Below, one piece after another: positions 1 through 47,473 of a DNA stretch of 64,000 bases (the stretch's first letter is position 1; the number at the start of each line of letters is the position of its first letter). The position numbers and the translations under genes are program-made. This stretch comes from Ascidiella aspersa (lineage: Eukaryota): positions 7,502,001-7,566,000 of the forward strand of contig OZ004607.1 in assembly GCA_963924565.1 (NCBI GenBank), given 5' to 3'. The notes below the pieces were generated by a model. It was not told the origin of the DNA and searched no databases. It worked only from the letters and a program-made list of their open reading frames with translations.

Positions 1-46
1 AAATGCACGGTCAAATGATTTAAGCAAAATAAAGTAATAACGCAAC

Positions 47-520: not shown

Positions 521-1140
521 AACACAAGCTTGCTGTGACCTGCTACACAACCCACTTGGAAATGTCGAAAATTATCTAGTGGCTTTTACAAACGACAGGT
601 ACAAAAAAATACGAGTGAAAGACTTGCCATTTCGAGTTACAACGGCGAGCCAACCAGACTGTGTAATACATTTTTTTTCACACAATACTCAAAACAACCG
701 ATCACTGTCGTAATGACCTGACTTAAGTGCATCTAAGTCAGTATTTTGAAATGACTTGGCTTGACTTAAGGAATTCGGGTAAAATTACTTAACTTGACTT
801 TTTTGGACAAAGTACTTGTAATGTTAATCACACAGTGATGTAAGTTTTTGATCGGTAAGATATCTTATTTACTTGCGGGATATATTACACGATAAACATG
901 AGCGTGTTCCTTTGGTTGTGTCATTGGGGGCGAGACTAACAATAGCTTGTAATGTTTAATGGCTATTTTTAAAATGCCATTTGTAATGGTAAAAAACGGC
1001 TTAACCCGAAAAGAAAATATAAGTTAGGGAGACACTGAGTTAACTAAACACGCTACCAATTACCATATACGTGTACACATCTATCAGCCCACCTGGAATG
1101 CTTGTGTCTTAACACAAAACGTAATAGAACATTTTCGAAC

Positions 1141-13100: not shown

Positions 13101-13228
13101 GGTTTCCAACGTCTGCTGTCTTCTGTGACTAAATCTTTTCCCGACAGAAGGTTTTGCCAAAATTCTTCAACGTTTTCCGACTCCGGAAAGCGACCGGCCA
13201 AACCTGATAGGCATATAATTTCATCCAT
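1141..13228 (-). CDS. Type I FAS-like megasynthase copy A, 5' part (KS and most of AT); gene continues beyond the left edge
   Basis: Twelve GT-AG exons: 13228-13099, 11658-11506, 10846-10673, 8836-8629, 7221-7088, 6964-6867, 6464-6257, 4168-3953, 3467-3303, 2748-2561, 2334-2145, 1370-1141. Lengths and phases match copy B except for 6 extra nt in exon 8. Motifs: [34 protein letters not shown] (KS); GMGCQW, GHSVG, AFHS (AT). Confidence 0.93.
7903..8096. repeat. Insertion containing a perfect 166-bp palindrome (7930-8095), flanked by a 14-bp direct repeat
   Basis: Two 83-bp arms with no spacer, centred on ATCGAT at 8012/8013. TGCTACGAACAATG at 7889-7902 and 8097-8110. Absent at the paralogous site near 26195. 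Confidence 0.9.
10984..11366. mobile_element. hAT-like MITE with GACTT subterminal repeats
   Basis: TIR CAGTGTTGTAA / TTACAAC(AAC)ACTG with perfect 8-bp TSD GGATTTGG. Empty site in copy B intron 2 (~22700). Relatives at ~704-830, 39515-40382 and ~42950-43314. Confidence 0.85.
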
Positions 13229-16229: not shown

Positions 16230-19200
16230 CAGCCCCCTTCGGTTGACGACATCGACGTGAATTGATTACGTAGGCCTTTGAAGAGAACGAGTTTGGCGAA
16301 GGTCAGCTGTTGTACTTCATCGCTGCTTATTGTGACGTTGAAATCGCGCTCCAGCTTTCGATCGCCATTAATAAGTCGAGAGCCAGACCGGAGAAGGTGA
16401 CATTCTTGTTAATTTTGTTCGTGTCTTGGAAAAATCACGACAAATATTTCTAAAAAGCCCAATTTACCTATGACTTACGACCCTTCACTACTGTCCTGTT
16501 TAGTTTGTTAATTTCATTATTTAGGTTTTAAGCAAAACCTGTTAAAAAGAATCCTTTGAAAAGCAGGACAGACCAGGCCACTTAACCAAAAATTCTATGT
16601 TTGCTACGGCGTCGACGACTGAAGACGGGCATTTTTCTTTTCTCTTTTCCCTGCTCTTGGTAGCGGGACAATGCTGGATACAACGACGTCTTCTTGCTGC
16701 GAAAAGAACCGATCCTGAGAGAGGCATTTAATATGTGTTTTTTTTGGCATTAAGTGTTGAATTGTTTGATGTCGATTTCTTATGTGATCGTGGCGCATTA
16801 AAGAGTTTTAGAAATTTTGGAGCATAATAGTTGGAGGTTGTGGTAAGACGTAATAAAAATATCAAAGCCCATACAGAAGTACGTATTATTTTGAACGTTT
16901 CGAATAAGTCTTTATTCATTTTCAACATAGTTAACGTATTTTTAAATTATCGCCTGGTACCAATTAATGAGGTTATACATTGGAATAATTGCATACAAAT
17001 ACGAAACTTTAATGTTTTTGAAGGCTAAACACCAATTTTAGGCATTTTAAAGTTTAAAGGCAAAGTTTATCTTGGGGGTAATTGCCAAATGTTTACCGCT
17101 GGACGAGACATTGCGAAACATATTCTACGTGTGCCGATACAAACGTTTAAAATGTAACTGTCTCATATTTGCTGTTTTACTCCTACAACCGACATTTTCT
17201 GTTGAAAGTTCTACCGTTTGATCCGATAGCAATAACGTCAATAATTATTATTAATGACAAATAAGTAGAATAATTTAAATTGATCCTTACTCGAGATTGG
17301 TGGTCAAGTATAGAATCAATACCTTTAGTATTTTAATACTGATATTGCAATAACATCGTTGTAAATTAAGAGGACTTAAAAAATTAAAAGCCCGTAATAA
17401 CGTTTTTTAGTCGGTTCTCAAACAAATAATATTTTGCGTTGAAAAATTGCCATACTGCAAATGTGCCTATATTTAAGCATGACGCCATCGACTGCATGAC
17501 TGTTCCGCATATGACGTCATTGCCGATGGTTTCCCCACTGTACGCGAGGTCTGGCAGTCGTTTTTTTGCAGCACTCGAGTTGTTACATTAAAGTCAATAA
17601 CGGGTTTCTTATATGACAATATCACCATAGTTGTCAATGAAAGCCGCTTAGTTGTACTAATATGTTTTTTGTGTTTTTAATGGATGAGGTAAAAAGTGAA
17701 CCTTTAATCCAAGCCAGGCAGTAATAAACCAACCAGGCGCCCAACATGGCATGTTCAAATTTATTAGTAAATTAACTTTTTCAATTGGTACACCGAAAGC
17801 CTTTCCAAGCCATTAGAAACTTTGCGCGTACTGATTCTGGGACAGCGAGTCCTTCAAAACCATGGCCAGGTGAAAAATGCCGCCTACGTCATCACTTAGC
17901 AGCTCGCTGGCGCCCTCCGGCGTGCTGACTTCGCAATTACTTACTATGACGTCGGCGCCCCTCGCCCGCCATCTGGTGAGATATTGTTGCTGGTAGACGG
18001 TCTTTACTCCTGCCAAGTGGTAACACGCAAACAATAAACATTTTTTAACTCGGAGGCTTTCACGTGGCGGAAATATGCCCAATGGGCCAATGTCCACCGC
18101 GGTAGACGTTCACAGAGAGGTTACCTGCGATGACGTCACTTATGTCGCCGGGGAGTGCTTCGGTAGACACCAGCCTTCCGTTTAACAAACACCTGGAGGA
18201 TTAGGTAATAAGACTAATGTTGACAATTTGTTTTTTCGAGCAAAGTTCAGTTTCGCACCTAACAGCAAGGTCAAGGCCATTACAATATTTATTTTTCGTA
18301 AAAACAGGTTTCACGCCCGTCACAAAACCAACGATGAGAAACAATACCGAGGTTTCAACTGAAGTCATAATACCTGACTTGTTTGCCGTTTGGTTCCTTC
18401 CTCAAACATTTCAACATCCCGACGACGCCATTGGCGTTTTTGTTTCCCCTAATCCAAACAGGAGATTGGCATGACGAGACAACTTTCTGTGTGGAACAAA
18501 AACATGGTTTGCCTGCCATTCTGTATCTTAAAGGGAAATTCATTTCGGTACACTGTTTTATTTAAGTCGACTGTGCTTTTTGATTGTAGCAGTAAAGTAT
18601 TATTTAAACTAGGCTCTACTATAGGCTCCAGAACTGCTGCGGATACCTCCAAGCAAAAATTTAAGTAACCAGAATTTTTAACTAATGCTATCTTGCAAAA
18701 AATGGTTTAGGCCCAGTCAACATTCTTGCTCTTTTCGTTTATTTCATGTTAACCCTGAAATCCTTACATTGACGATTACCTCATTCACCGTTAACAAAAT
18801 ATTTTAGTTTGTTTAGCCGTTCGACCTTAGTAGACCGCCTATTACAAGAGACGTGCTTTGGAACACTGGCTCATCGTTCAAAATTACATATTTACACAAC
18901 GGAGTCAAACAAACAAAATCCAAAACCTCAAAAAAAACACCCATTCGAAATCGGAAGAGCCGACGTCAATGATTTGCGGTTCCTTAGCCGCCTGCTTATT
19001 TTGTGACGACACAAGAACAAGTTGCTTCCCAAAATTTCGTCAGACTTTTTGAGGATGATTTCTAGACATTAAACGGGAAGGGACAAAACAAATTAAAAAT
19101 ACTTCTAACCCTAATTGTGTGGCGCTGAATTCGCTTATTTGAAAGGTTGATTTACATTACACTCAGGTGATTAAAGGGTTAACAATAAAGTCAATACAAC

Positions 19201-19473
19201 TGTCAATTTTACTTGTCTTATATACTTGACTTTATTATTGAAAGCGAGTTAGTTAGTTTTCAAACCATGCAGCTATTCCCAAATTTTGTGTTAGCAGTTC
19301 TATTTAGGACACGTAGCCAGGTAATCATAGACTCACACCTAAAAAAAAAACTAGAGCAAAATTACATGTTCATCTGTTCAGCATACGAATACTCGCATTT
19401 GTGTTCTGGGTCAACAACTCTCAATAGAGCATCCGCGATTTGGTGGAAAGGAGTCTGTTTCGTTTGTTGTTGA
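16230..19473 (-). pseudogene. Deleted and degenerate 3' half of a further FAS-like paralog (remnants of exons 21-24 and 32-35 with introns)
   Basis: Collinear similarity to 36900-38410 and 44215-46837. Exon 24 is joined directly to the exon 32 acceptor region. ACP DSL reads DLL followed by a frameshifting deletion, and the exon 21 donor is mutated (CAG/ATGAAC). Confidence 0.88.
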
Positions 19474-19475
19474 AA

Positions 19476-19870
19476 TTTGCGTGTTACCACTTGACAGAAA
19501 GAAGACCGCCTACCAGCAACAATATCTCGCCAGACGGCGCACGAGGGGCGCTGACGTCTTAGTAAGTAATTGCGACGTCAGCACACCGGAGGGCGCCAGC
19601 GAGCTGTTGACTGATGACGTGGGAGGCATATTTCACCTGGCCATGGTTCTAAAGGACTCGCTGTTTCAGAATCAAAACACGCAAAGCTTCGAAGATGTGT
19701 GAGGAATCAAGTGCAATGGAACCGACAACCTCGACAGGTCAATACACGGCTAAAAGTTTCTATCTTGTTAAGACCACCAGTAAAAAACCTTATTGCAAGA
19801 TTGTTAAGCTACTGGTCTTATCTCTAGATTTGAGTCGATAAATAGCTCGCACAACTTTAATGTAAAAAAA
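19476..19870 (+). pseudogene. Inverted extra copy of KR exon 32 plus following intron
   Basis: Matches 44218-44600. Premature stop GTG TGA where copy B has GTG TGC. Confidence 0.88.
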
Positions 19871-20215: not shown

Positions 20216-21109
20216 AAGTATTTATTCATGCTGTACTCGCGATTTTAATCTTTTTGTCGAACCTAATATGCAGAGACTTATTTAAAAAATTGTCGCTTTT
20301 TGATTTGGTTGGGCCACTGTGGTCACTGTTTTGATTTGGTTGAGTCAAGTGTACATCCATATTGAGTTTGGTTTTAGGCAAATTTATTTTTTAATTGAAG
20401 ATATGGCTTTTATTAATTAAATGTGATCGTATATATGCTAATGTTTTATGTTTTTTCGCTTACAAAAAGTAAAGAAAAATTGTGTCTTTAATATTTTATT
20501 GTTTTACTTGCTGTTTAGTCGCCACGCAAAAATATTGAGAAACACTGGTTTTATAACCAAACAACAAAAATTTGAACTAAATGGATGACCAACAATTAAA
20601 CCAATTCTTATTGGTTCAGAAAAATTTGTTTACGCATGGTGCAGATGTGATACTGCCAATAAAAAAAATAATAATTCATAATATCTCAAGATTTATTTTT
20701 AATTAGACTACATTTTATGTACAATGATTTGCAAATGCATTTTAGAAATTCACCCTGATGAAGGCTTCTGACGCTGATGTCGTTCTTGTTCATGTCTTAA
20801 GGCTGGAGTCCATACCATGCCTGGTAGTAACAGCGTATTTATTGAGTACTTGGTATGGGTTGAAGACTAAAATTTCTTGTTGACGCCAAGCTTTTTACTG
20901 TATTGCAAAAAAAACGTTGAAGTTCAAGGTTTAAAAAAGTGTAAAGGTTTTGTATAAAACTTAAATGCTGACAAAGCTTATTTACGAACAAAGTCTTACA
21001 AACCGCCATAAAACACGCCACAGTCAATCAATGTTCGCATGAGATACACCTGTTAAAAACGATTTAAAGCTGAGTAAAGTCTGGCCGAGAATTAACCCAA
21101 ATTACCGGT

Positions 21110-21262
21110 AACGTTTGACCGGGAGTAACCCTTTTGCGACGTCATGCCGGTCGGCGCAAGATCGCACCACGTCCGTGAATATAACAGGATAAGTTCCCAA
21201 AATCTATTCACATTTGCCATCTCAACGTTCGAGGGAACGTTAAAATTGTTTTTGTTGCAAAA
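21110..21262 (+). promoter_or_regulatory. Conserved proximal promoter / 5' leader of copy B
   Basis: CRE-like GACGTCAT, SRE-like ATCGCACCAC at 21161-21170 and TATA-like AATATAA near 21178, all shared with copy A. Confidence 0.55.
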
Positions 21263-24200
21263 ATGGATGGTATAATATGCCTATCAGGTTTGGCCGGTCG
21301 CTTTCCGGAGTCGGAAAACGTTGAAGAATTTTGGCAAAACCTCCTGTCGGAAAAAGATTTAGTCACAGAAGACAGCAGACGTTGGAAACCAGGTAAAGTG
21401 AAATTTTGCGTTGTTTATAAGTATGATTGTCCCATTTTATTTTTTTCTTATTCGCCAATCTTTTGTTGATTTTTGTTTAAATTGCTGCGGAATAACTAAT
21501 AACTAAGCAAATAGCGCAGCCTCGGGAATTTTGGTAAATCCATATTGCTAATGCGATTTGTGCATTATAAAAACTATAAATAACAGGTGATTTTTTAGTT
21601 GTTTTTCTTTTTTTCTGTAGTTTTATATGGTTTTTGATTGGTCATGTAATAAGAAAAACTTATTACCTGTTGTTTTTCTGGCTTGCTCTGCTTCCATCAT
21701 AGATCGACAGATTCGGCGAGTCTGCGATGGCTTTTCGGTGTACTATTGATACGGAAGCCGTAATCGTTGGTCATTAAGCAACTTCCGAGGGGCTAGATCG
21801 CAGATGTTATTAAACACATATGTTTGTGTGTGTCTTTCATTATTACCTGGAGTTGTGTTTTACTATTCTTGCGCGACAAACTATATAACGGACCCCGACG
21901 GCTTTCCAGATATCCACCAAGGGAAACTTAGCAATGTTTCTGCTGTGCTTATTGCTAGTTCGGCTTTGGCTGTCACGTAATATTGTTCACGTGCCATTAC
22001 GCCGCCAATTCGTTTTTTTTTTATTTTGGCCGTCTATCCAAAGTACAAGTTATTAACGTGGTGTGGTATGGTATGGCACAATTAAAACATAATGGTCCAT
22101 TTAAAAAAGTATTCCACAACAATACTCAAATTGCGGGGGTTTAAATATTTAGGTGGTACACTGAAACTTCGAATGTTAGTAAAAAGCAGTACCATATAAA
22201 AAAAAAATTTCCATATAAAATTAATTTGATAAAAATATAAATCCAACTAACTAAGCTATAGCTTGTATTAAAAACCAGCAGCTTGATTCTGTAATTTTCG
22301 ATCTTCCTTTGAAGCAATTACGACTATCTGTTGACAAACATAACCAATGTCTTTTTAATTTTCAAACACAACGCTTGCTAAATTTTGAAACACATTCTTA
22401 CCCTAATGCTTTGTATTAAAGGGCTGTGGAGCCTTCCGAAGCGAAATGGAAAACTGAAGGAGCTGGACAAGTTCGATGCGTCGTTCTTCGAAGTTCACTC
22501 CAAGCAAGCAAACAACATGGACCCGCAGCTGAGACTGCTTCTAGAAGTTTCCTTCGAAGCAATTGTAGATGCAGGTAAAGCAAAAAAAGAAGGCAAAAAA
22601 CAACCTTACTTACAAGATATATAGATATTTAGCTACTAATATTTAACACTATACCTTTTTGCTTTAATTGCCTAAAACATTATCATATTTAAAATGCACC
22701 TAATCCTATTCCGTTATCTAGCAGTTACCAGGAAAAACAAATGTTTATTGTTTATTTGTCGTTGTCGCTTCAAGTGAAATCTGATTATCCAGTTTCCAAC
22801 CCCAACTAGCAACTTACATTCGCTCTATAAACGCAGGCGTAAGCCCCATCAATTTGTCGGGCAGCCGAACCGGGGTCTGGGTGGGGTCGACTGGATCTCA
22901 ATCAAGAGAAGTTCTGTCCAGCGACCCGGAAACGTTGGAAGGCTACAGCATAATAGGCTGTGCTACTTCGATGTTTGCTAACAGACTCAGCTACTTCTAC
23001 GACCTCAAAGGTATTGTGCTGGCAGCTGCTTTTTAATCGGTCGATAAGATTGGTTTTCATTGCGAAGGAGGGTCTAGTCCCCGTCAATAGTTGGGGGTGG
23101 TCCGAAATAAAATATCCGTATAGAAATAAAATACCAACTACCAACATCGCTAGTTTGGGCATATCTTGGTACAGGTATATCATTTTGGTTCACGGTAAAA
23201 TACTTCCTAGGAGAGTAAACTTATTGAAATTTGCAAAAAAATACACAATTGCGCCTATGTTAATCAATTAATCAACAAATAACATCTGCATGCAATCAGG
23301 ATAAATTGTTTTGATTTGTTATAAAACATTAGCGAAGACACCAGTTAAATATACTAACATCGTGTAAGCCAAGATAAGTTAAGGCCGTATTTTACTTTTT
23401 GAACACAGGAATGCTTTTTAGGTTGGGGGGCATTTAGTTTGTTATCAAATAAGTGTTGTTCGAGTGCACTAGCTTAGTCTAAAACTTGCTTATATGCATG
23501 GTTGTGTTTCAGTACTTAAATTTTAATTTATACACAAAACCAAACGAAGCAAGGCCTCGGCCAATGTTTGTCATTAATAGGGTTTACCTTAAAATACATT
23601 TTGCGTGAGAGAAGTTGCGAGACAATCACGTAAGACGTCTAATCGCAGTGAAGTAATATCAGCTCTGCCATGCAGGGCGACCTGACGTAAAATCAGACCA
23701 CTAGAAAATGTCAGTTGTATTCAGACTTGGACAACTAGATTTATTTTAGCTTTTTAAGATTAGATTTGAATTAAAATTGGAGCATTTTAGTTTTTCCAAA
23801 TTGGATTAGAATGAGATCGTTTTGAGTTTTCTCAAATTCGAGTAGAATTAGAATTACCGAATTTTAAAAAAATCACATTTCAATTAGAATTTGAACTAGA
23901 ATCACATTTAGTTTTTACAACCAATTTAATCTTATAAGAACGTGAATGGTAAATATGTGTGTGCTAATTTTCATGATTTTTGGACTGTAAAAATTACATA
24001 CAAGTCGTTCCAACCAAAAAAATGTAATTAAAATTCTGTTTTTGAACTGAGAGACTGAAAATGCCGTTGGACGAAGTAGCATTTTTAGTAAAATCCAAAT
24101 TAGATTAGAATTAGAATTAGCCACATTTTGCTCTAATTCAATGAATTAGAAAACTAGACTTATCTAGTTGTCCAGGTCTGGTTGTATTCACGTTTCTGTT

Positions 24201-27200
24201 ATTCACGTTTCACGACTGTGAAGACCTATTCAAGTCACGACTGCGACGACCTGTATCGTCTGGCGTTAACCAAACCATAATGAAGCCAATTTTGCGTTAA
24301 TTCTGAGCCAGAAATGTCGTTTTCGGTTGTTATCCAGCGACTCGCGTTTTTTTTTTTTGCACGCTAATGGTGCATTTACTGTTAGCGAAGTGAAAGGCAC
24401 TTGTTTTATATTTATTGGTAAATTCCTACTACGCATCTCGCATAACATAATAATAATCTAGCAATATAGGCGGAAGGAAAGACTGTTTAACATTTTCAAC
24501 CATTTAATATCACTGAAACGTCAAAAAACGATTTTTTAAGAATACACAATGTTGCCCAAAGTTTCCAAAAGTCGACGATTTCAACTTAATTAGTTTTTTT
24601 TCATGAAGAGAAGCACTTTTATAACTTGAAATGACAATCTTCTTCTTTGTCCTGTGAAACTAAAGAATGGAAGTTAAATCCTAAACGGGATCTTTAACAC
24701 AAAAACAATAAATTTAGCCTACCAGGATGTTATAATCGCGACCACCTCGAGCCAATGTAGCGCTTCCAAACCTGTCCTTCCTGAACTTAATCACGTGAGT
24801 GGTCCAACCTCAGTGACGTTATATCAGCTGTGCCATGCAGGGCAACCAGACGTAAAATCAGACCACTGGAAAAATGTCACGTTTCTGTTGAATTCACGTT
24901 TTGTCGTCACGAGTGCAACGGCCATATCATCTGGCGTTAACCAAACCGTAATGAAGCCAATTTTGCGTTAAGATCTGAGCCAGAAAGGTCATATCCAGCG
25001 ACCCGCGTTAATTTTTTGCACGCTAATGCCGCATTTACTGTTAACGAAGTGAAAGGCACTTGTTTTATTTTTATTGGTAGGCGGGAGGAAAGGCTGCATT
25101 TCCAGCCATTTACTATCGCTGTAACTGTAACAGTAAAAAATTTAAGCACACACAATGTTGCCCAAGGCTTCCAAAAAATTGACGATTGAAACTTGAATTA
25201 TTTCTTTTTCATGAAAAAGAAGCACTTTTATAGCATGAAATGACATTCTTCTTATTTTTCCTATTAAACTAAAAAATGGCAATTAAATCCTAAACGGGAT
25301 CTTTAACACTAACCAATACATAGTGTCCTAATTCCAATGTCCCTACAAACTTAGCCTGTACCAGGATTTTATAATCGCGACCACCTCGAACCAATACAAC
25401 ATTTCCAAACCTACCCACCTGAACACAGCACTTAACAATACAATACCTTTAAAAGGTCCGAGCATGTCGGTGGACACGGCGTGTTCGTCTAGCCTCCTGG
25501 CGCTCCAGATGGCCTGCCAGTCGATCCGGGAGGGCCACTGCGACGCGGCGATCGTTGGCGGCTCGAACCTGCTGCTGAAGCCCCAGTGCTCGCTGCAGTT
25601 CCAGCGCCTCAACATGCTCTCGCCAGATGGAGCGTGCAAGTCATTTGACGCTTCGGGCAACGGGTGAGCTGTGAGGTTGCGATTTTTTATGTTTTTTAGC
25701 GTTGTGTTTATAGATTTCGGCGAATTTTTACATTTCAAAATTCAATGCGGTTATTAGGTGGCGTGTTTTTTTTTTCTCCACAGTATCAATTTTACGCCAC
25801 ACTCTTAAGGCTAGAAACTTCCCTGCCAAAATTCATTTAATATGTGTTAAATTAAAAAAACATTCTTTTGTATATTATTTTTTTGGAGGATACATAGAGA
25901 TAACGCAAGTATTGTGATTAGAGGCTTTGGTCTTTTGACATTCAAAATTCGTGGCGTGTTTGTTTGCCAAGTATTAATTAATTGAGTTTTATATTTTATA
26001 AAAATAGAGGTTAGGCAAGCACTCTACGAGACCTCCGAATGGGAGGCAAATAACTAGATTTGGAAACCAATGGGTCACCTACTGTTACAAACCCAAATTT
26101 AAGTAACCTAAAAAAAGAATAAAAATATTTTAAGTTACCGAAAAACAAGCTCCGCAAAACCGCTATTGCTCTAATAAATGATTCTAAAAACACTGTTCGT
26201 AGTAATTGTTAAACAACGCACTTAGTGCCAACTTGCAAACTATTTCGTTGGCCGGTAAACAAGAGATAACGTTTCGGGCGAAAAAAGTAACTTTTCATTA
26301 ACAAACACAGCCGTCTTCCAAGTCCTTTTGCGCTTTCTGCCTTCTCAAACAATATGGTGGCTGCCAACTCTTCTCTGAACAAGCGTGTTACAGTCAAATA
26401 CGCAGTTTTCGTTATAGCGTGCATTTAAGTCGCATAATGGTAAGAAAATAGCGGACGTTTAGAACTTTTAGAATTTTCAAAAAACACTTTTTCAAAGCAC
26501 TTACTTAAATTTTAACTATTAGTTTTTAAGCGCTTTCGAATTTTAAGTTTCTGTATCAAGGTTCGCTAGATCTGAAGCCGTGATCGCCATTTTCATATGC
26601 AAAAAAGGAATGACGTCACACAGTTATTGTGACGTCGTTCACGCCCAGACCAACACGGACGGCCGAAAGAAAGAGGGAATCACTTTTCCTTCAGGTGAGA
26701 TAACGTTAACCGTCACAAACTTCGTATAGCGTTGAGTCACATTTTCTATTTAAAGACAAATAATTCTCGCATTACAAATAGTTATAAAAGGCTAATCGTT
26801 TTTTCTTGAATCCATTCCAGGTTACCAGCAAAGTCTGCTGCTGCGAGAGACTTACGCAGAGTGCGGTTTAAACCCGCAACTCCTGGATTACGTGGAAGCC
26901 CACGGCACCGGCACCAAGGTGAACGCATCTTGTGAAATACAAATTAACGGGTATTTTTTATTCGTTCAACAACCTAACCAAAGTTAAATAACGTGTCGTC
27001 ACTGTTAGTTGCTTAATGCTCATGGGACGAAAATTGTCAAGAAAAAAAGTTAATTTAAGGTGAGTTTAAAAATGACAAGCTTTTTCATTTTATGTCGCAC
27101 AAATATTAGGCCTTGGTATAAAACAGAGTACCAGGGTCCATGCCCCTACCTATCTAATTATAAATGATTTGTACGCGTCGTTCCTACATGGCACAGTTGT

Positions 27201-39200: not shown

Positions 39201-42200
39201 CGATATATGCTCACATATGGTTGATTTACTTTGTACTTTAAAGATTGGTTAACTTATGCATGTTGTAATAGGCAACTGGCGACGATTCTCAACTCTACTC
39301 GGACTCGAGTTCAGCGGATATGACGTAAGCGGATCGAGGATTATGGGAATGGTCCCGGCGGAAGGACTCGCCACTCACGTGACCACCGAGCCGCGGTTCA
39401 CGTGGGAAATACCCGAAAACTGGTCAGTTCTGACAACAATGTGGCCGCTATATTAAAATTATCCAAAGCAGACAGAAACAATAAATGACTTTTCTTAGTA
39501 GAAAGGGTATGTCGCAGTGTTGTAATGACTTATATCAATAACTTGACTCAAGTGCACTTAAGTCACTGTTTTCAAATGACTTGACTTGTTTTTATAAAAT
39601 GACTTGACTTGGACTGAATTTATTAACCCAAACGACTTGGGTTGAAATTAGGTGTTTTTATTTAACATTTTACTATAAAATTAAGGTTTTATCTAACATT
39701 TTGCACGTAAAATCATTATATTGTAACATGCGTTACGCCAAGGTATAGGATCCATACTTAACGGCCCGTCCGATGCCGAGCGCTGCACGAAGCGCCTTTA
39801 AACTGTATATTAATATAGGCGAACTGTAAACAACCAATAAAATACGTAAAACAATCAAAAGCGGCACGTCTAAAAACGAGCAGAAACGTAATTTGCGAAA
39901 GTCTCCAAATGTTATCAAAGCTCTCCCAAAACCCGACAGCCCTCATTTTCCTCTCTTTTACAAACAACTACAACAAGGGGAAAAAGTGCCAACTAAAAAC
40001 GTGGTAAGATAAGAAATAAAGCGTGAAAGATATAGAGGCGATATAATAAAAGAAAGAACGAGTGTGAAAAACAGACGCTCAAAGGATAAAATGCCGGAAC
40101 AATACGACACAAATAAACCATAAAATAATGCGTGTAACACATGTTGTTTTTTGCTACTTTTTAGTTGAATTACTGCTCATAATCTGTCGAGTTTACCAAT
40201 TTTAATGATTTATCGTTTTATTATTACATTAGTGGTTTGACGTGAAGATGACTTGCTATAATAATGACTTGACATGGACTGGTCTAGGGCAGCTGATGAC
40301 TTGGACTTGACTTGTTAGTTTAAAAAAAAGACTTGACTAGGACTAAGTTGACTTTCAAAAAAATGACATGCTTACAACACTGAAAGCCATTGCAGACTCA
40401 CCTAATTTGTCGATCAACGATGCATGCAGGGCAGACTAGAAAAACAACTAGACCGCAGTGCGGTTCGAACTCACGACATATGGTCAAGCCGGACGCTCTA
40501 CCAACTGAGCTATGCACGCTCAGGGAGGAGGGAGTCGAGAAATAACGATAAGCCAATCCTTGCTCAATCTGTTAGTACAAGCAATTTCATAAATATGAAC
40601 TAACAGATTGTGCAAGCATTGGCGTATAGTTGTTTGACGACTCGCTGCTGACAAGATTTTTCATGTTTAACTAATAAAAATCATCACTGTAAAGATTTTG
40701 TGGGAAAAAGAAGACTTTTGTAGGAAAAAGAAGGGATCTAATTCAAAGCAATAACAGAACCTATTTGATTTAATAAAAACATTGCTTAGTGCTTCTATAC
40801 GCTGATAAAAATAAGTCTTTTTATGATTTCCAGGACAATGAGCGAGGCCGCGACGGTTCCAGTAACCTACTCGACCGCCTACTACGCGCTCCTGGTCCGC
40901 GGCCGAATGCGCCGGGGGGACACCGTCCTGGTCCACAGCGGCGCCGGGGGCGTCGGCCAGGCGGCCATCGGCATCGTATTAAGCCGGGGGTGCCGCGTGT
41001 TCACCACCGTGTCTTCTCGCCGCAAGAGGGAGCACTTAATGGCTCGCTTTCCGCAGTTGAGTGAGGCAAGCTTCGCGAACTCACGTGACCTCTCCTTCGA
41101 GCAACACGTGATGAAGCAGACCAATGGGAGAGGTGACAGTTAATCAGTATTTATTTTCTACGAGGACAGTTACCCTTTTTACAACCCTTTACTAATTTAC
41201 TAGATTTTTCTTGCCTTTTTTCACTTTGAATGCATTAAAATGTCAAGAAAACAAGTTTAGAAGAACCGCCTTATGTTGAAGAAAGTTTGACGAAACTCAG
41301 AGCTGTGTTAATTTTGATTTAAAAAACACGTTGGTACCGGAGAAATCATGGACTATTCTTTCTAACTGACGTTTTCAAAATGTTTAAAAAGGCGTGGACA
41401 TCGTGCTAAACAGCTTGGCTGAAGATAAGCTTGAGGCGAGTGTGCGATGCGTTGCTAAGCACGGCAGGTTCCTAGAGATCGGCAAGTTCGACTTGGCGCA
41501 AAACTCAAAGCTTGGTAAGTTTTTCAGTTCATTTGGCCAATATAACACACGAGGTACTCTAGTCCAGTGATCTTCAACCTTTTTGTCCGTTGTATACCTC
41601 TAACAACTTTTTTATAACTTTCTACACCTTGCAAATAACAATGCACAAGGACTGGGGAGGGTTTTTGAACGCTGTAAACTAGATTGATAACTAAATACAT
41701 GCTTAAACCACCCGATCCGTCAGAAATTAGTGCAGTTCTAAGCAAAAAGGTCTACGACAATTAGTGCATCCAAAGGATCAAAAAGTCCGACTTTCAGAGT
41801 TTGAGGTCTTTTCAGACTTTGAGGTATATACCATGGACGAATAACTATCTTATGCCCACCCGAGTTTGGGCTTTTTCCCAGCGTTCAAATATAATTATTA
41901 AATTAACGCACATTATTTGGGTTAGGATTCGGGTTAGCGTTTGGGTTAGGGTGGGTCAAGTGTTATTAATTTTGTCTTCCAGATTTTGTCATCGGTTGGG
42001 AATTGCAATTTTGCTGTGTGCCTGAAACGGAGTAATTTTGTTTTAATTTAGTACCCCTTGGCTTACCATAATTGTTTAACGCTTGCAGACGTCAATGAGT
42101 ACTTGATCTACCCTTTTGAAACAAGTTGGAAATATAGTTTTGTTTTTGTTATTTTTTTTAAACTTGCGATAAGTCACCCTTAAAAGTTTATTCTCGCTTC

Positions 42201-45200
42201 GAAGGCATGTCGGTGTTCTTGCGCAACATTTCCTTCCACGGAATTCTGCTCGACTCGCTCTTTGATGACGACACAAACGACTGGCGGGAAACAGCCGACC
42301 ACGTGACGGAGGGAATCCGAACCGGAGTTGTCCGACCCTTGGACACCACAATATATGAAAAGTATAAGTGTTTTTTCTTTTAAGCAGAGGAATCAGGTGG
42401 CACTGTATAAAGACAAATTGTATTAGATTCTCGACAAGCTTTCGCACAACCGTGCTTCATCAGGTCAAAGTATAAATAAAACAATTAAAATGCACGTAAA
42501 AGCACAGGCGCAAGTAAAAGGCAATAAGAATGGTGACGTCTAACATATCCACAGGCACATGCTCGCAAAAGCGCGTTACTGACGCAAAAACAATTATACT
42601 ACGAGGCCTGCGCTTCGAGGTACGATGGGTGTAGTACAGCCTGCTATGAGGTGTAGTGTGACATAAAGCCCAAATCCCGATTGAGCCCGACATTAATGGC
42701 ATCGAACTTTTTAATTATGTTTTGTTCGACTGTGAGCTTTTAAGCGTAACCCTTTGCGAATGTGAAAGATACCCAAATCAGACAAACATAAAAAATAATA
42801 TTGAATAAAATTGGCAAACACATAGTGTGATATTTTTCCCGAATATTTAACTGTAAAATTATTATCGTTCTACATTGCGTGGCTTTCGAATTAAATTATT
42901 ATGTCACGAAATTATGGAAGTTTTAAACATCCTTGCTTTCTGTCCTAGTTGAAATGACTTAAGTCCAAGTGAAGTCCTTTAGAAAAATAACAAGTCGAAT
43001 CCCAGTCAATCATTATTAGAGCAAGTCACATTCAAGTAAAGTCATTCGCATAATGAATAAAACGTTAAACTGTTAAAATTGTATACTCGTCCGTGTATGA
43101 GAATTTTATCAACTATAAAAGTTACATAAACGCAGCATTTAGTAATCAAATTTTATTGAAAAAAATTATTGAAATCACCTAATTTCAACCAAAGTTTATT
43201 TGGCACAATGACTTAAGTGTAAGTCAAGTAATTTTTTCAAAAGTCTTTAGTCAAGTCAAGTAACTTAAAATCAGTGACTTAAGCAAGTCGTTGACTGAAG
43301 TCACTGCACCACAGGAAATTGAAGAATGTTCAGATAACATATAAGTAACAAGGTATTGCTGAGCAAATGTAGCAAAATATTTATATTTGGATACGATGTT
43401 TCAACGCAGGGACAAAATCGAATCAGCGTTCCGCTTCATGGCACAGGGAAAGCATATTGGCAAAGTGCTCATCGATATGGAAAGTGGAAGCGAACATATT
43501 AAAGCAATGCCAAAGTAAGGCGCATTTCAGCAGTAGTTCAATTATAATGTACCTATAGTTTAAACGTTTCCAAATATTCTTAAATTGATCAGCTTTTTAA
43601 ACAACATTCCAAAAAAAAAAAAAAACACTAAAATGTATTTCGTTGGAGTTTTTTGGAGGAAGGCAATTTTCCGTCAGAAACTTAGATAACTTATCGTTAT
43701 CATACAAACATTTATTCTTCCAAAACAGGTACATTTATTTTATAAAACTAGCTATTAGGAACTCTTTAGGAATAAATTTAAGTTTTAGTTTTACAACTTA
43801 CAACTATGAAGTTCATTTTAAATATTTTTGTTTTTAAGAACTTCCTTCGACCCTGATATGACGTACGTCATCACTGGTGGGTTGGGAGGCTTCGGATTGG
43901 AGCTCTGTGATTGGATGATTCACAGGGGAGTTCGCCGTGTCGTCATCACAAGCAGATCAGGTGAGAATAAAATTTCGCAAATTTGAAAAGGGCTGTCATT
44001 TGCATACTTAAAAACAAACAAAATCTCTTCTGGTTCGACTGGAGACCTAACGTGCCGTCAGGCTAATATATCCGATTTCGACGATTAGCTAAATGCGGCA
44101 AAAATCGGTTTACGCAACGTGTCGGGTCTTAAACTGTTTTTTTAATAAAACTTAGGCCACAGAAAAAATCTATTATACTAATACAGAATGACAGGATTTT
44201 TAATTTTTTCTGTTTTCGTGTTACCAATTGACAGGAGTAAAGACCGGCTACCAGCAACAATATCTCGCCAGGTGGTGCGCGAGCGGCGCTGACGTCATAG
44301 TAAGTAATTGTGACGTCAGCACGCCGGAGGGCGCCAGCGAGCTGCTGACTGATGTCGTGGGAGGCATATTTCACCTGGCCGTGGTTCTGAAGGACTCGCT
44401 GTTCCAGAATCAGAACGCGCAAAGCTTCGAAGATGTGTGCGGAATCAAGTGCAATGGAACCGACAACCTCGACAGGTCAATACACGGCTAAAAGTTTCTA
44501 TCTTGTTAAGACTACCAGTAAAAACCTTATTGCAAGATTGTTAAGCTACTGGTTTTATCACTTGATTTGAGTAACAGCTCGCGTAACTTAAATGTCAAGG
44601 TTTTGATCAAAAGAGTCAACCATGGTAGCTTTTTTTTAACAAAACGTCTGCCAATGGAAATTGTTATTGACTTAATAATATATTTAAGAATCCCATTTTG
44701 AGCGCCTGGTTGGTCCAACACTATATTCTCGCAGTCAAACATTTGGCTTAATTTAAAAATTCTCTTTTCACCTCACCTATTCTTACTATCAACCACGAAA
44801 ACCTTATTAATACAACTCAGCGAATTTTATTGAAAAATGCGGTAGTTTTACGTCCATATTAGAAAAATAAACTATAGAGATCGCTACGATTGGAATCTTT
44901 ACCAGCTATTTATCCATGCTGTTCTCACAATTATAATATGTTTATCCAACTTGACATACAGAGCGTCGCGGCTCCAATGCAAGCGTCTGCGACTCTTTGT
45001 CGTCTTCTCGTCGATGGTGAGCGGGAGGGGAAACCCCGGCCAGACGAACTACGGCCTCGCCAACTCGCACTTGGAGCGCGTGTGTGAGCAGCGGGCAAGA
45101 GACGGACTGCCAGCCCTTGCCGTACAGTGGGGCGCCGTCGGTGACGTGGGCGTCGCCATGGAAACCATCAGCAGTGACGTCATATGCGGAACAGTTAGGC

Positions 45201-46804
45201 AGTCGATGTCGTCATGCTTGAATGTAGGTGTAGTTGCAGTATGACAATTTGTCAACGCAAAATATCTTTTGTTGGAGAACGGACTAAAAACTTTGCTGAC
45301 GTTGGCTTTTGATTCGGTTTTTATTTTTTTAAGAGTCCTTTGCTTTATAGCGATGTTATTGCAAGATCAGTGTTAAAAATACTTAAGTTATTGACTCTAA
45401 CTTGACTCCTATCTCGAATAAGGATGTATAATAAAATAGGTTCAAAGTTAAAACCATTTTCTGGTTGACAAGTTTCTCTTTTTTAATTTTAACTGTTTCA
45501 CTAATTTGTCAATAATAATGACGTTATTGGATCGAACGACAGAACTTTTAACAAAACATTTCAGGCGTCGTAGTAAAACAGAAAATATCTCCACATCTCC
45601 AGGTTTTAACATTTGTATCGGGAAACGAAGGATATGTTCTGTACTGGCTCGTCTTTAAAATGCCTAAAAATGGTATTTAGCTTGTAAAATATTAAAGTTT
45701 CGTATTGGTATGTAATTTGTGCGGTCGTTCCAGTGTTGTTAATTCATTAATTGGTACCAGGTGATAATGTTGTATTTTTAAAAACGTGGTACGAAATCTG
45801 ACATGTTTTACTCCGGGTTAACGACACTAAAAATATCGAGAACCATCACACATTTCTGAAATTATTTAATGCGCCGCGATCACATAAGAAATCGACATTA
45901 AACAACCCAACACTTAATGCAAAACAAACACATTATTAGATGCCTTTATAAACAATGCCAAAGTATCACATATCAAATGCCTCTATACACAGCAGTGATC
46001 GGATTTCGGCATTTGTAAGAATTTTGTTGCTAATACGTCACAAAGTATTATTTGACGAAAGGTTTGTTTGTTGCAATTATATTATCTTTGGCAACTAATG
46101 TTGTTTTACGGAGAACCCTTGTTTAACATAAACCACAGGACTTTCTACACACTTTGGCTATAGGTTGTGTTTTGTCGGGTAAAATAAACTGTAGATTTTT
46201 TTTCCAGACCCTGGACCGATTCCTTTCACAGCAGGAAGATGTTCTTGTTTCCAGCATTGTTCCTGCTCCCAAGAGCAGAGGAAAGAGGAAACAAGAGGGT
46301 GGCTCCTCTATTATCGATGCCGTAGCAAAAATCTTCGGAACTCAGGCAAGATTTTCCTTTGTGTTCACTTTATTTGGAAGACTATAGTTTCTGCTTTTAG
46401 TTAATATTTGGCTTGATCCGTTTTGGCCAACCAATCATCAGTTGGGCATTTGTGGTAGGGACAGAAAAACACTTCTCGTGGCTCGGCTTTGGAAACTGAG
46501 CGCGTTAACTGTAAAAAATAAGGGAGGGGGGGTTGAAATGGCCTAGTCCGTCCCGCAAGTCGCAACATACGTTACAAGTCATGGGTAAATTGAGCTTTTT
46601 CAGAAATTTTTGTCGCAATTTATCCAGGACACGAGCAAATTGAACAAGGAAGTGACCTTCTCCAGCCTGGGTCTTGATTCGTTGATGACGATCGAAATTA
46701 AACAAAAGCTGGAACGCGATTTCAACGTCACAATGAGCAGCGATGACGTACAACAGCTGACCTTCGCCAAACTCGAGCTTCTCTCCAAAGACCTACGTCA
46801 TTAA
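21263..46804 (+). CDS. Type I FAS-like megasynthase copy B, complete, about 2158 aa, KS-AT-DH-pseudoMT-pseudoKR-ER-KR-ACP, no thioesterase
   Basis: 35 exons: 21263-21392, 22422-22574, 22837-23010, 25456-25663, 26561-26694, 26821-26918, 27273-27480, 28112-28321, 28805-28969, 29568-29755, 29981-30170, 30684-30913, 31424-31642, 32183-32465, 33803-33991, 34455-34697, 35294-35474, 35692-36047, 36234-36407, 36535-36717, 36832-36998, 37330-37497, 37971-38083, 38265-38409, 38691-38883, 39272-39422, 40834-41132, 41392-41514, 42205-42361, 43410-43514, 43839-43960, 44235-44475, 44962-45223, 46208-46345, 46628-46804. Phases are consistent and the sum is 6477 nt. Domain order and motifs follow animal FASN. 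Confidence 0.93.
23624..25420 (+). repeat. Tandem duplication of about 650 bp in intron 3 of copy B
   Basis: Units start near 23624 (interrupted by the MITE) and 24789, both with AATCACGT...CCATGCAGGGC...GACGTAAAATCAGACCACT. Confidence 0.8.
23722..24180. mobile_element. hAT-like MITE with ATTAGA repeats
   Basis: TIR CAGACTTGGACAACTAGAT / ATCTAGTTGTCCAGGTCTG with perfect TSD GTTGTATT. Absent at the paralogous site in copy A (~9900). Confidence 0.87.
29568..32465 (+). other. AT (malonyl/acetyl transferase) exons of copy B
   Basis: GMGCQW, GHSVGE (catalytic Ser), GIAFHS, LEIAPH and the post-AT linker WDHS. Confidence 0.92.
31682..32043. mobile_element. hAT-like MITE with GAACCG repeats
   Basis: TIR CAGGGAGTCGAAC / GTTCGACTCCCTG; flanks GATTTTTT / GATTTGTT. 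Confidence 0.8.
33803..35474 (+). other. DH domain exons of copy B
   Basis: [10 protein letters not shown] (HxxxGxxxxP), [20 protein letters not shown] (catalytic Asp). Confidence 0.88.
39515..40382. mobile_element. GACTT-family MITE carrying a nested insertion
   Basis: TIR CAGTGTTGTAA / TTACAACACTG; same family as 10984-11366. Confidence 0.75.
39731..40139. mobile_element. Probable solo LTR nested in the MITE
   Basis: Ends CGTTAC...GTAACA (degenerate TG..CA inverted termini), 4-bp TSD CATG, internal AATAAA. Confidence 0.5.
40384..40564 (-). mobile_element. tRNA-related (SINE-like) repeat
   Basis: Minus strand reads TAGCTCAGTTGGTAGAGCG...GAGTTCGAACC; homologous to 19927-20105. Confidence 0.7.
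43839..45223 (+). other. KR domain exons of copy B
   Basis: [25 protein letters not shown] and GQTNYGLAN (catalytic Tyr). Confidence 0.92.
46208..46804 (+). other. ACP domain and stop codon of copy B
   Basis: AVAKIFGTQ|DTSKLN...[19 protein letters not shown]...[16 protein letters not shown] then TAA at 46802-46804. Confidence 0.92.
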
Positions 46805-47473
46805 GTCACGTTGATGACGTCTACCAAAGAGCGATAAAAGATAACAAATGCCTTTTTCGCGCTTTGCGTCAACCCTTTACTGCCTCTGTAAATGTAATTA
46901 AACACGTTTTTAAGTGGAAAAAATATCCGAGGTCCGCCTGATTTACAGTTATTCTAACATTTCAATAACATAATTCTTAGTTAACATTTTGTGCGGCCCT
47001 CCGAGACCTTTCTCAGTTTGGTTTTGTGTTTTGTCCCGCGACTAGAAAAAGGTTGCCGACCCCATGCCCTGCCGTATACCGAAAAGACGAATTAAGACCT
47101 AGCAATAGCATAATTTTGTAATAGAAAATTATGGGGTATGTAGTGTCTAATTCTGCGCCCAGAAGTGTGCCGACGGCCAATCGGTTACTTAAGGTTTTAC
47201 TACTCAAAACGCGCTGTCCTACACGGTTCTCTCCCCCAAAACTTCACAAAGAAACACGCAAATATCCATGTGGCCTTTTTTTGTATTAGTTTAGCTTGAA
47301 GACCTTTTTATAGTCTGGCAACCCTGTTACAGTAATATGACAGTTTAAATCGAAGTTTGTGTGAACCTATGTGGTAATATGAGTTGTGACCTTAGTGATT
47401 ATAACCACAGCATTATGTGAATATTACGTAATAAAAGACTTAAATCAACTAAGCTGAAAACGCTAAAATTTAA

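What the first reader, a model, noticed from the sequence alone, without database searches (positions are those of the whole stretch)
21263..46837. Fully reducing animal FAS-like megasynthase with no thioesterase: candidate specialised lipid/polyketide synthase
Seen: an uninterrupted 35-exon frame with intact KS (C-H-H), AT (GHSVG, AFHS), DH (H, D), ER (GAGGVG), KR (GGLGGFG, Y) and ACP (GLDSL) motifs. It terminates about 35 residues after the ACP serine, and I found no TE-like exon (GxSxG) in the 2.3 kb before TRMT10A. Established: canonical animal FASN ends in a TE that releases palmitate, and animals also encode FAS-like PKSs that make secondary metabolites. Inference: this is not the housekeeping FASN. 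Its chain must be offloaded differently, for example by AT back-transfer to CoA or by a trans-acting TE, reductase or PLP-dependent condensing enzyme. If the host is an ascidian, lipid-derived amino alcohols and alkaloids are plausible products, but that is speculative.
Basis: partly seen in the sequence, partly recalled or inferred. Interest (0 to 1): 0.88.

Follow-up and report, generated by a model that had tools for sequence, protein, structure and literature searches.

The report
Fatty acid synthase copy lacking thioesterase
A sea-squirt-like genome carries, head to head with its normal fatty acid synthase gene, an intact duplicate that has lost the chain-releasing thioesterase and still looks kept by selection; it is one of three such truncated synthases in this genome, so its product must leave the enzyme by a route not yet known.

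Summary
Window 21263-46804 (+) is an uninterrupted 35-exon gene of 2158 codons. It encodes KS-MAT-DH-pseudoME/pseudoKR-ER-KR-ACP with every catalytic motif intact and no thioesterase (TE).

The interpretation needs revising. The gene ("C") is an inverted duplicate of a canonical TE-bearing FASN ("A") on the minus strand, whose exon 1 lies at 13228. All 34 splice sites are shared. Identity is 93.5% on conserved columns, and the KS, MAT and ER exons are nearly identical.

TE loss can be read in the DNA. A 16-nt gap at ~46790 shifts the frame to give ...[10 protein letters not shown] relic of the ACP-TE linker runs to ~46842, where a ~220-bp dispersed repeat begins. No TE remnant follows.

A vs C gives dS 0.335 and omega 0.19, and neutral simulation makes the open frame unlikely without constraint. 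Synonymous divergence is patchy, which suggests gene conversion. C changes 2.3 times faster than A.

Two further TE-less FAS-like genes lie on contig 3 (omega 0.17 between them). Only gene A has a TE.

This is not a polyketide-type enzyme by sequence. It most likely builds the same saturated chain as FASN and releases it differently. Expression could not be tested.

The parts
21263..46804 (+). Gene C: TE-less FAS paralog, 35 exons, 2158 codons plus TAA
   Evidence: Exon model. Exons: 21263-21392, 22422-22574, 22837-23010, 25456-25663, 26561-26694, 26821-26918, 27273-27480, 28112-28321, 28805-28969, 29568-29755, 29981-30170, 30684-30913, 31424-31642, 32183-32465, 33803-33991, 34455-34697, 35294-35474, 35692-36047, 36234-36407, 36535-36717, 36832-36998, 37330-37497, 37971-38083, 38265-38409, 38691-38883, 39272-39422, 40834-41132, 41392-41514, 42205-42361, 43410-43514, 43839-43960, 44235-44475, 44962-45223, 46208-46345, 46628-46801. 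All splice dinucleotides are conserved in paralog A.
21263..28321 (+). Exons 1-8: ketosynthase and its C-terminal extension
   Evidence: PF00109, PF02801 and PF16197. Motifs DTACSS, EAHGTGT and KSNMGHSE are present.
28805..31642 (+). Exons 9-13: linker and malonyl/acetyl transferase
   Evidence: PF00698 on four exons. Motifs GHSVGE, YLRGKC and AFHS are present. Exon 11 is identical to A at the protein level.
32183..35474 (+). Exons 14-17: dehydratase
   Evidence: PF21089, with weak PF14765. Motifs [10 protein letters not shown] and FLDA are present.
35692..38409 (+). Exons 18-24: non-catalytic central region (pseudo-methyltransferase position and pseudo-KR)
   Evidence: PF21149 on exons 23 and 24; no Pfam hit on exons 18-22. 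This is the part most diverged from A: dS 0.63, dN 0.17, omega 0.26.
38691..43514 (+). Exons 25-30: enoyl reductase
   Evidence: Weak ADH_zinc_N hits. tblastn to FAS ER gives 66% identity over 100 aa. Motif GAGGVG is present.
43839..45223 (+). Exons 31-33: ketoreductase
   Evidence: PF08659 on all three exons. Motifs GGLGGFG and QTNYG are present.
46208..46801 (+). Exons 34-35: KR-ACP linker and acyl carrier protein; intron 34 has a GC donor
   Evidence: PF00550. Motif GLDSL is present. The GC donor is conserved in A.
46790..46791 (+). Site of a 16-nt gap relative to paralog A. It shifts the frame so that the protein ends ...ELLSKDLRH
   Evidence: Three-way alignment of C, A and fragment B. 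A reads on as ...ELLSDGSQPSAPTSS... into the TE. B has the same gap.
46802..46804 (+). Stop codon TAA
   Evidence: Sequence read directly.
46791..46842 (+). Relic of the ancestral ACP-TE linker, now out of frame and past the stop
   Evidence: It still aligns with A's exon 35, and in the old frame it resembles A's PTSSDPADDV.... Homology to both A and B ends at about 46842.
46843..47063 (.). Copy of a dispersed repeat of about 220 bp that abuts the homology breakpoint; it contains ATTAAA at 46897-46902
   Evidence: At least 38 further copies at 86-91% identity, among 2956 first-look candidates in the genome. Alignment with three copies. A role for ATTAAA as a poly(A) signal is an inference.
20915..21262 (+). 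Duplicated 5' flank and presumed promoter region shared with gene A
   Evidence: 86% identical to 13588-13229 on the opposite strand.
1..13228 (-). Paralog A (canonical FASN), exons 1-12; the gene continues left of the window to about C1:7483425 and ends in a TE
   Evidence: The TE exons lie outside the window at -16772..-17137, -17612..-17800 and -18282..-18575, with GYSFG, DGS and ADH motifs. PF00975 hit at C1:7484944-7485174.
16224..19475 (-). Fragment B: degenerate partial copy of gene C (exons 21-24 and 32-35 with C-type introns); the ACP motif is destroyed
   Evidence: It shares the 16-nt gap and lacks exons 1-20 and 25-31.
19476..19866 (+). Inverted extra copy of the exon-32 region of gene C, abutting fragment B
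   Evidence: 90% identical to 44213-44598.

Best explanation
Gene C is a real, intact, lineage-specific duplicate of the neighbouring canonical FASN (gene A).

How it arose: an inverted duplication put the two genes head to head. In the C copy, the single exon that in gene A and in a related tunicate copy encodes ACP, linker and the start of the TE suffered a 16-nt deletion. That deletion stops translation 40 residues after the ACP serine. About 40 nt further on, the exon is cut off by a dispersed repeat, and every TE exon is gone.

How it most likely works: the remaining KS-MAT-DH-ER-KR-ACP machinery is almost identical to that of gene A. The enzyme should therefore load acetyl and malonyl units and build a fully reduced saturated acyl chain on its ACP, as FASN does. 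It cannot hydrolyse that chain itself. Release must come from outside the polypeptide or from the MAT domain.

My ranking of release routes, all inferred and none shown:
1. A trans-acting hydrolase or acyltransferase outside the PF00975 family that takes the chain from the ACP.
2. MAT-mediated back-transfer to CoA.
3. Function only within a heterodimer with gene A.

Shown here: the anatomy, the origin, the way the TE was lost, and the constraint on the reading frame. Inferred: expression, product and release route.
For: Anatomy:
- 35 exons with all catalytic motifs intact.

Paralogy with gene A:
- Identical exon count, and identical exon lengths except for in-frame differences.
- All 34 introns share their splice dinucleotides, including the rare GC donor.
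- 89% nucleotide and 88% amino-acid identity over about 2090 codons.
- The 5' flank is shared.
- Gene A has an intact TE.

How the TE was lost:
- 16-nt gap, linker relic and loss of homology at about 46842.
- A dispersed repeat starts there.
- No TE relic as far as 53500, with a positive control on gene A.
- Related tunicate contigs have ACP, linker and TE start in one exon, which is the ancestral state.

Constraint on the frame:
- A vs C over 2078 codons: dS 0.335, dN 0.063, omega 0.187.
- In the 527 codons with dS above 0.45 there is no stop. Neutral drift on the C lineage for even a tenth of that distance leaves an open frame in only 1.4% of simulations.
- Fragment B carries the same 16-nt gap and is 79-88% identical to C in shared introns. 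The truncated state is therefore older than that divergence, yet C has no stop or frameshift while B is wrecked.

Precedent in the same genome:
- Two more FAS-like genes on contig 3 end shortly after the ACP.
- Both keep all motifs and share the same C-terminal tail.
- Between them dS is 0.228 and omega 0.17 over 1555 codons.

The stop lies in the last exon of the present gene, so nonsense-mediated decay is not expected. This last point is an inference from general knowledge.
Against: - No expression evidence.
- Synonymous divergence varies strongly among exons (chi-square 111, df 34, p 4e-10). Exons that are 93-96% identical sit between introns that cannot be aligned. Gene conversion from A probably keeps many C exons intact, which inflates the apparent constraint on C.
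- C has accumulated 2.3 times more amino-acid changes than A (86 vs 37, p 1e-5). This could be early decay rather than adaptation.
- On the branch after the B split, C shows 14 synonymous and 15 non-synonymous changes in 326 codons. That is too few to settle anything.
- No release enzyme was identified.
- From memory and not checked here: animal FAS stripped of its TE stalls with long acyl chains on the enzyme, so a TE-less FAS without a partner would be nearly inert.
Confidence: 0.7

Rival explanations
1. Gene C is a young, non-functional unprocessed pseudogene. The frameshift killed it, and its frame looks intact only because gene conversion from the functional neighbour A keeps overwriting its exons.
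For: - dS is heterogeneous among exons, and near-identical exons are flanked by unalignable introns. Both point to conversion.
- Protein evolution is faster in C than in A.
- The locus is full of rearranged debris, namely fragment B and the inverted exon-32 piece.
- There is no expression evidence.
Against: - The least homogenised part (527 codons, dS 0.49-1.02) is also free of stops, with per-exon omega of 0.10-0.41. Simulation gives at most 1.4% chance of this under even brief neutrality.
- All length differences from A are in frame, and all 68 splice dinucleotides are kept.
- Fragment B, of the same origin and also lying next to A, was not rescued by conversion.
- Two older TE-less FAS-like genes in this genome are under omega 0.17 with no TE-bearing partner between them.
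Confidence: 0.12
2. Gene C has no catalytic cycle of its own. It acts as a partner subunit, pairing with gene A through the nearly identical KS and ER dimer contacts and so changing the output or regulation of the FASN dimer.
For: - The KS, MAT and ER exons, which make up the dimer core of animal FAS, are the parts kept most similar to A: dN 0.026 for exons 1-13 and for exons 25-30.
- The two genes share 5' flanking sequence, so co-expression is plausible.
Against: - Nothing here tests binding, and the split exons could not be submitted as chains.
- From memory and not checked: in rat FAS heterodimers the TE serves only the ACP of its own subunit, so C's chamber would still stall.
- Keeping every catalytic motif in all six domains is not required for a purely structural partner.
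Confidence: 0.1
3. Gene C is an animal FAS-like polyketide synthase in the sense of the mollusc and arthropod AFPKs, with altered chemistry such as methyl branches or incomplete reduction.
For: It lacks a TE, as do mollusc AFPK clades 1-3 (PMC10764717).
Against: - It is nested in the tunicate FASN lineage and 93.5% identical to the TE-bearing FASN next door.
- The MAT exons are identical or nearly so.
- ER and KR are intact.
- The methyltransferase position gives no Pfam hit.
- The substitutions specific to C are conservative and lie away from the catalytic motifs.
Confidence: 0.05
4. The TE is not lost but missed. It would be encoded by distant exons, or the truncation would be an assembly error.
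For: Only 6.7 kb downstream was searched exhaustively. The genome-wide Pfam search scores only the best candidates.
Against: - The stop lies upstream of any possible donor in frame, so translation ends in exon 35 whatever follows.
- The 16-nt gap is present twice independently in the assembly, in C and in B.
- The next gene on the same strand starts within 2.3 to 4 kb.
- The only host PF00975 hit belongs to gene A, on the other strand.
Confidence: 0.03

Closest known systems
Canonical animal type I fatty acid synthase (FASN); nearest sequences Phallusia mammillata FAS (P0173), Ciona FAS (P0023, P0172) and gene A of this genome
   Same: Same domain order from KS to ACP and the same catalytic motifs. 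It has the FAS-specific pseudo-KR (PF21149) and the same intron positions as gene A. Identity on conserved columns is 93.5% to gene A and 73.7% to Phallusia FAS.
   Different: No thioesterase. [quoted passage not shown]
Animal FAS-like polyketide synthases (AFPKs) of molluscs, clades 1-3 (PMC10764717, PMC10515154)
   Same: They are FAS-derived megasynthases of animals that lack a TE, and for most of them the offloading route is unknown.
   Different: AFPKs form their own clades, are reported only from protostomes, and differ from FAS in chemistry. The same paper found only FAS, and no AFPKs, in tunicate transcriptomes. Gene C is a recent offshoot of FASN itself, with catalytic domains essentially unchanged.
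Aberrant FAS paralogs of insects that lack one or more domains (PMC5039406)
   Same: They are lineage-specific FAS duplicates with domain loss. Some are apparently functional, judged by RNAi lethality in Tribolium. Firefly and beetle FAS-like proteins of 1800-1900 aa that end about 100 residues after the KR match were among my hits.
   Different: They belong to a different phylum and arose independently. In insects the losses often affect MAT, ACP or several domains. Here only the TE is lost, and the lesion can be read in the DNA.
Two further TE-less FAS-like genes of the same genome (contig 3, 10975684-10990529 minus strand and 11055273-11073992 plus strand)
   Same: KS to ACP with all motifs intact. 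They end 47-48 residues after the ACP serine, have no TE within 16-25 kb downstream, and form a head-to-head pair under purifying selection.
   Different: They are much older: about 59% identity to A, C and Phallusia FAS on conserved columns. They have fewer introns, and their truncation is a different one, with its own conserved C-terminal tail.
Highly reducing iterative PKSs of fungi without a release domain, such as LovB released by the separate hydrolase LovG (recalled from memory, not checked here)
   Same: A working model for how a fully reducing megasynthase without a TE can turn over, namely through a separate enzyme that takes the chain from the ACP.
   Different: No sequence relationship is claimed, and no candidate partner was found here.

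Membership tests
Animal type I FAS (FASN) | Domain order KS-MAT-DH-(pseudoME)-pseudoKR-ER-KR-ACP on one polypeptide | tested here: met
   Pfam hits exon by exon, in that order.
Animal type I FAS (FASN) | Catalytic residues of KS (Cys, His, His), MAT (Ser, Arg, His), DH (His, Asp), ER and KR nucleotide-binding motifs, KR Tyr, and the ACP Ser | tested here: met
   All motifs were read in the exon translations and match gene A and Phallusia FAS.
Animal type I FAS (FASN) | C-terminal thioesterase (PF00975) that releases the fatty acid | tested here: not met
   The stop comes 40 residues after the ACP serine. There is no TE exon or relic as far as 53500, while a control on gene A was positive.
Animal type I FAS (FASN) | Phylogenetic placement within the animal FAS lineage | tested here: met
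   Identity matrix on 1364 shared columns: C-A 93.5, C-Phallusia 73.7, C-Ciona 54-55, C-vertebrate 55-57. This is a matrix of summed per-exon counts. No tree of a joined model was built.
Animal FAS-like PKS (AFPK) | Separate clade from true FAS in KS-based analyses | tested here: not met
   The KS exons are identical or nearly identical to the TE-bearing FASN next door.
Animal FAS-like PKS (AFPK) | Absence of a TE (mollusc clades 1-3) | tested here: met
   definition taken from PMC10764717.
Animal FAS-like PKS (AFPK) | Polyketide-type product (methyl-branched or incompletely reduced) | not testable with these tools
   This needs product analysis. The sequence gives no hint of it.
Unprocessed pseudogene | Stops, frameshifts or lost splice sites, and omega near 1 | tested here: not met
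   There is no stop in 2158 codons, all splice sites are kept, and omega is 0.187. Simulation argues against neutrality. Gene conversion is a confounder, so a small probability remains.
Expressed gene | Spliced, polyadenylated transcript ending after exon 35 | not tested

The most novel reading that the evidence does not exclude
Ascidians have evolved their own TE-less synthases from FASN at least twice: an old pair on contig 3 and the young gene C. These would be a deuterostome counterpart of the protostome AFPKs. They would hand fully reduced acyl chains directly to downstream enzymes of specialised lipid metabolism through a release mechanism that needs no thioesterase. Gene C would then show the first step of that transition, with the causal lesion still legible.
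Probability: 0.3. Interest if true: 0.75.

Novelty: new variant of a known kind. Interest (0 to 1): 0.58.

Why it matters
A recent survey states that every animal FAS carries a TE, that TE-less FAS-like synthases (AFPKs) may be confined to protostomes, and that tunicates have only ordinary FAS (PMC10764717).

This genome holds one ordinary FASN and three FAS-derived genes without a TE. The truncated contig-3 pair is under purifying selection, and gene C's open frame points the same way. That is a direct counter-example in a chordate.

Gene C is young enough that the steps can be read in the DNA: duplication, a 16-nt frameshift in the ACP-TE exon, a repeat at the breakpoint, and loss of the TE exons. 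Its catalytic domains are still those of FASN. It is therefore a natural experiment on what a fully reducing animal FAS does without its release domain, and on how such enzymes begin to diverge.

It also offers four closely related constructs (A, C and the contig-3 pair) for testing release mechanisms. If the gene proves unexpressed, the finding becomes an ordinary young pseudogene kept tidy by gene conversion.

Tried and rejected
- **Joined model.** All searches were exon by exon by reference, and all statistics were summed over exons. For the same reason no KS tree was made; an identity matrix from per-exon counts stands in for it.
- **Proteins of this species or TE-less tunicate relatives.** Two searches with tunicate FAS ids returned only the TE-bearing Ciona and Phallusia proteins among tunicates. 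Database coverage is thin, so this is not evidence of absence.
- **Stand-alone thioesterase.** The only other PF00975 hit (contig 20) is MenH inside a bacterial menD-menH-menB operon on a 45.6-kb contaminant contig.
- **Splice models.** The first two dynamic-programming runs chose wrong sites that were compatible in phase. They were corrected with homology at the junctions and with gene A.
- **Three-branch count (A, B, C).** Fragment B shows the same ratio of synonymous to non-synonymous changes as C. This is best explained by A-to-C conversion moving shared changes onto the B branch, so the test is uninformative.
- **Global alignment of intron flanks.** Too noisy to quantify intron divergence. 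I rely on the blastn results instead.
- **Homology beyond the breakpoint.** Weak similarity between fragment B and gene A past the breakpoint scored no better than shuffles.
- **Repeat classification.** ARAGORN found no tRNA-like part in the repeat region.
- **Earlier findings of this scan.** Nothing was found by place or by words.
Full report
**What is there.** The + strand between 21263 and 46804 carries 35 stop-free pieces. They join into one consistent gene model of 6474 nt, or 2158 codons. It starts at ATG 21263, preceded by an in-frame stop, and ends at TAA 46802-46804. There are 33 GT-AG introns and one GC-AG intron.

Pfam scans of the single exons, by reference, gave the following in this order:
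- KS (PF00109, PF02801, PF16197)
- acyltransferase (PF00698)
- DH (PF21089, with weak PF14765)
- the FAS-specific pseudo-KR (PF21149)
- ER (weak ADH_zinc_N)
- KR (PF08659)
- ACP (PF00550)

The protein ends 40 residues after the ACP serine. Every search was exon by exon, and every statistic was summed over exons.

**No thioesterase.**
- The + frames downstream have no Pfam hit.
- Eight TE-bearing FAS C-termini searched by tblastn against 46700-53500 gave only noise at E<=10. The same queries found three TE exons in the paralog described below.
- A genome-wide six-frame search with PF00975 found two places only. One belongs to that paralog. The other, on a 45.6-kb contig, is bacterial MenH between menD and menB, so it is contamination.
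- The next gene on the same strand is a TRM10-type methyltransferase, with PF01746 at 51676-51960.

**The neighbour explains the gene.** On the minus strand, exon 1 of a second FAS gene ("A") lies at 13228-13099. The gene runs out of the window to about C1:7483425.
- A has the same 35 exons. Exon lengths are identical apart from three in-frame differences, and all 34 introns use the same splice dinucleotides, including the GC donor.
- A then continues. Its exon 35 reads straight from the ACP through a linker into the start of a TE. Three more exons complete a TE with GYSFG, DGS and ADH motifs.
- Two metagenome contigs from a related tunicate show the same arrangement, with ACP, linker and TE start in one exon. 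This is the ancestral state.
- A and C are head to head and share about 350 bp of 5' flank at 86% identity.

The organism is an ascidian-like tunicate. On 1364 columns shared by all sequences:

| Pair | Identity |
|---|---|
| A vs C | 93.5% |
| A vs Phallusia mammillata FAS | 76.5% |
| C vs Phallusia mammillata FAS | 73.7% |
| A or C vs Ciona, vertebrates or protostomes | about 52-58% |

**How the TE was lost.** Aligned with A, exon 35 of C lacks 16 nt at about 46790/46791. The frame shifts, and translation stops four codons later (...ELLSKDLRH*). In the old frame the next ~50 nt still resemble A's linker. Homology then ends at about 46842.

At that point a ~220-bp interspersed repeat begins (46843-47063). 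At least 38 further copies were scored at 86-91% identity. The repeat contains an ATTAAA at 46897-46902 that is invariant in the four copies aligned. It may serve as the poly(A) signal, but that is an inference. Nothing FAS-like follows.

Between A and C lies fragment B (19475-16224, minus strand). It is a wrecked copy of C's exons 21-24 and 32-35 with C-type introns (79-88% identical), a destroyed ACP motif, and the same 16-nt gap. B lacks the repeat. The likely order is therefore frameshift first, then the B/C split, then the repeat junction and loss of the distal exons in C. This order is inferred.

**Is it kept by selection?**
- A vs C over 2078 codons: dS 0.335, dN 0.063, omega 0.187.
- Synonymous divergence is very uneven among exons, from 0.10 to 1.02 (chi-square 111, df 34, p 4e-10).
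- Introns 1-11 align at 70-86%. From intron 12 onward blastn finds nothing, although the flanking exons are 75-96% identical.
- I read this as an old duplication with continuing gene conversion confined largely to exons. That reading is inferred. It means omega alone overstates the constraint on C.

The least homogenised exons give a cleaner test. These are 527 codons with dS of 0.49-1.02. They have no stop and per-exon omega of 0.10-0.41. If the C lineage had drifted neutrally for even a tenth of that distance, only 1.4% of simulations keep the frame open; for a quarter or more, none do.

The truncated state predates the B/C divergence, which is roughly 0.15-0.2 substitutions per intron site. 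Since then B has decayed and C has not.

With Phallusia FAS as outgroup, C carries 86 derived amino-acid changes against 37 in A (p 1e-5). These cluster in exon 3, the second half of DH, and the KR-to-ACP region. None touches a catalytic motif. C is therefore constrained, but less so than A.

**Not an isolated case.** PF21149 and PF02801 searches of the genome led to two more FAS-like genes on contig 3: 10990529-10975684 on the minus strand and 11055273-11073992 on the plus strand, again head to head.
- Both keep all catalytic motifs.
- Both end 47-48 residues after the ACP serine with the same tail.
- Neither has a TE within 16-25 kb downstream.
- They are about 59% identical to A, C and Phallusia FAS and 92.5% identical to each other.
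- Between them dS is 0.228 and omega 0.17 over 1555 codons.

Both members of that pair are TE-less, so this constraint cannot be borrowed from a TE-bearing partner. TE-less FAS-derived synthases are thus maintained in this lineage, which raises the prior that C is functional.

**What it most likely does.** The KS, MAT and ER exons are identical or nearly identical to A, with dN 0.026. I therefore expect the same chemistry as FASN: a fully reduced, straight, saturated acyl chain built on the ACP. The difference lies in release.

No PF00975-type enzyme other than A's own TE was found in the host. My ranking of release routes is:
1. A trans-acting hydrolase or acyltransferase of another family.
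2. MAT-mediated transfer to CoA.
3. Action only in a heterodimer with A.

Three pieces of background come from memory and were not checked here:
- Animal FAS stripped of its TE stalls with long acyl chains on the enzyme.
- Ruminant FAS can discharge medium chains to CoA through its transferase.
- In rat FAS heterodimers the TE serves only its own subunit's ACP.

[quoted passage not shown] Insects have "aberrant" FAS paralogs lacking various domains (PMC5039406).

Gene C fails the FASN architecture on one feature, the TE. It fails AFPK membership on clade placement. It is best described as a new, independently arisen TE-less variant of FASN in a chordate.

**Limits.**
- There is no expression evidence, no product and no partner.
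- Conversion confounds the selection tests.
- The exon 8/9 junction is uncertain.
- The near-coincidence of the A/C and B/C homology ends at about 46842 is only partly explained by the repeat.

**Verdict.** This is a real and probably functional TE-less FASN duplicate, and the event that removed its TE can still be read in the sequence. It is of moderate to good interest to people working on animal lipid and polyketide synthases.

Noticed in passing
G000:C3:10975684-10990529 (minus) and G000:C3:11055273-11073992 (plus); loci L011-L012, L016-L018, L026-L029: Two further FAS-like genes, head to head about 65 kb apart. All catalytic motifs are intact, they have fewer introns than A and C, and both end 47-48 residues after the ACP serine with the same tail and no TE downstream. 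They are 92.5% identical to each other, with omega 0.17.
   Followed up: partly
G000:C20:16596-20102 (L008): The 45.6-kb contig 20 carries a bacterial menD-menH-menB operon. It is probably a contaminant or symbiont contig in the assembly.
   Followed up: partly
window 46843-47063: An interspersed repeat of about 220 bp, with 38 further copies scored at 86-91% identity among 2956 first-look candidates in the genome. It carries an ATTAAA that is invariant in the copies aligned. ARAGORN found nothing tRNA-like in it.
   Followed up: partly
window 47939-48300: A second, unrelated high-copy repeat of about 360 bp, with 39 further copies scored at 92-97% identity among 4205 first-look candidates, so recently active.
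   Followed up: no
window 40372-40566, 19927-20102, and gene A intron at window -3049..-3248: Another short dispersed element, shared by an intron of C, the A-C intergenic region and an intron of A (76-78% identity).
   Followed up: no
window 55239-56165 (minus): An intronless 309-aa open frame that encodes a complete Ser/Thr protein kinase domain (PF00069, E 2e-63).
   Followed up: no
window 62130-62351 (plus): An exon with a C1 (phorbol ester/diacylglycerol-binding) domain, PF00130. It may be the start of a PKC- or PKD-like gene running off the window.
   Followed up: no
G000:C3:23958253-23958459 (plus): The best Ketoacyl-synt_C hit in the genome (E 5e-21) lies outside the four FAS-like genes. 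It may be the mitochondrial KAS or another KS gene.
   Followed up: no
L020 and L021 (JGI metagenome samples 3300001463 and 3300001689): Two ~6-kb metagenome contigs carry ER-KR-ACP-TE exons of a tunicate FAS, 81% identical to gene C in the KR exon. Host DNA of a related ascidian is therefore present in those metagenomes.
   Followed up: partly
window 20915-30942 versus 31424-46801: There are two strata of A/C divergence. Introns and 5' flank are alignable (70-86%) up to exon 12. Introns are unalignable from intron 12 onward, although the exons there are up to 96% identical. This suggests a more recent large conversion or re-duplication of the 5' third.
   Followed up: partly
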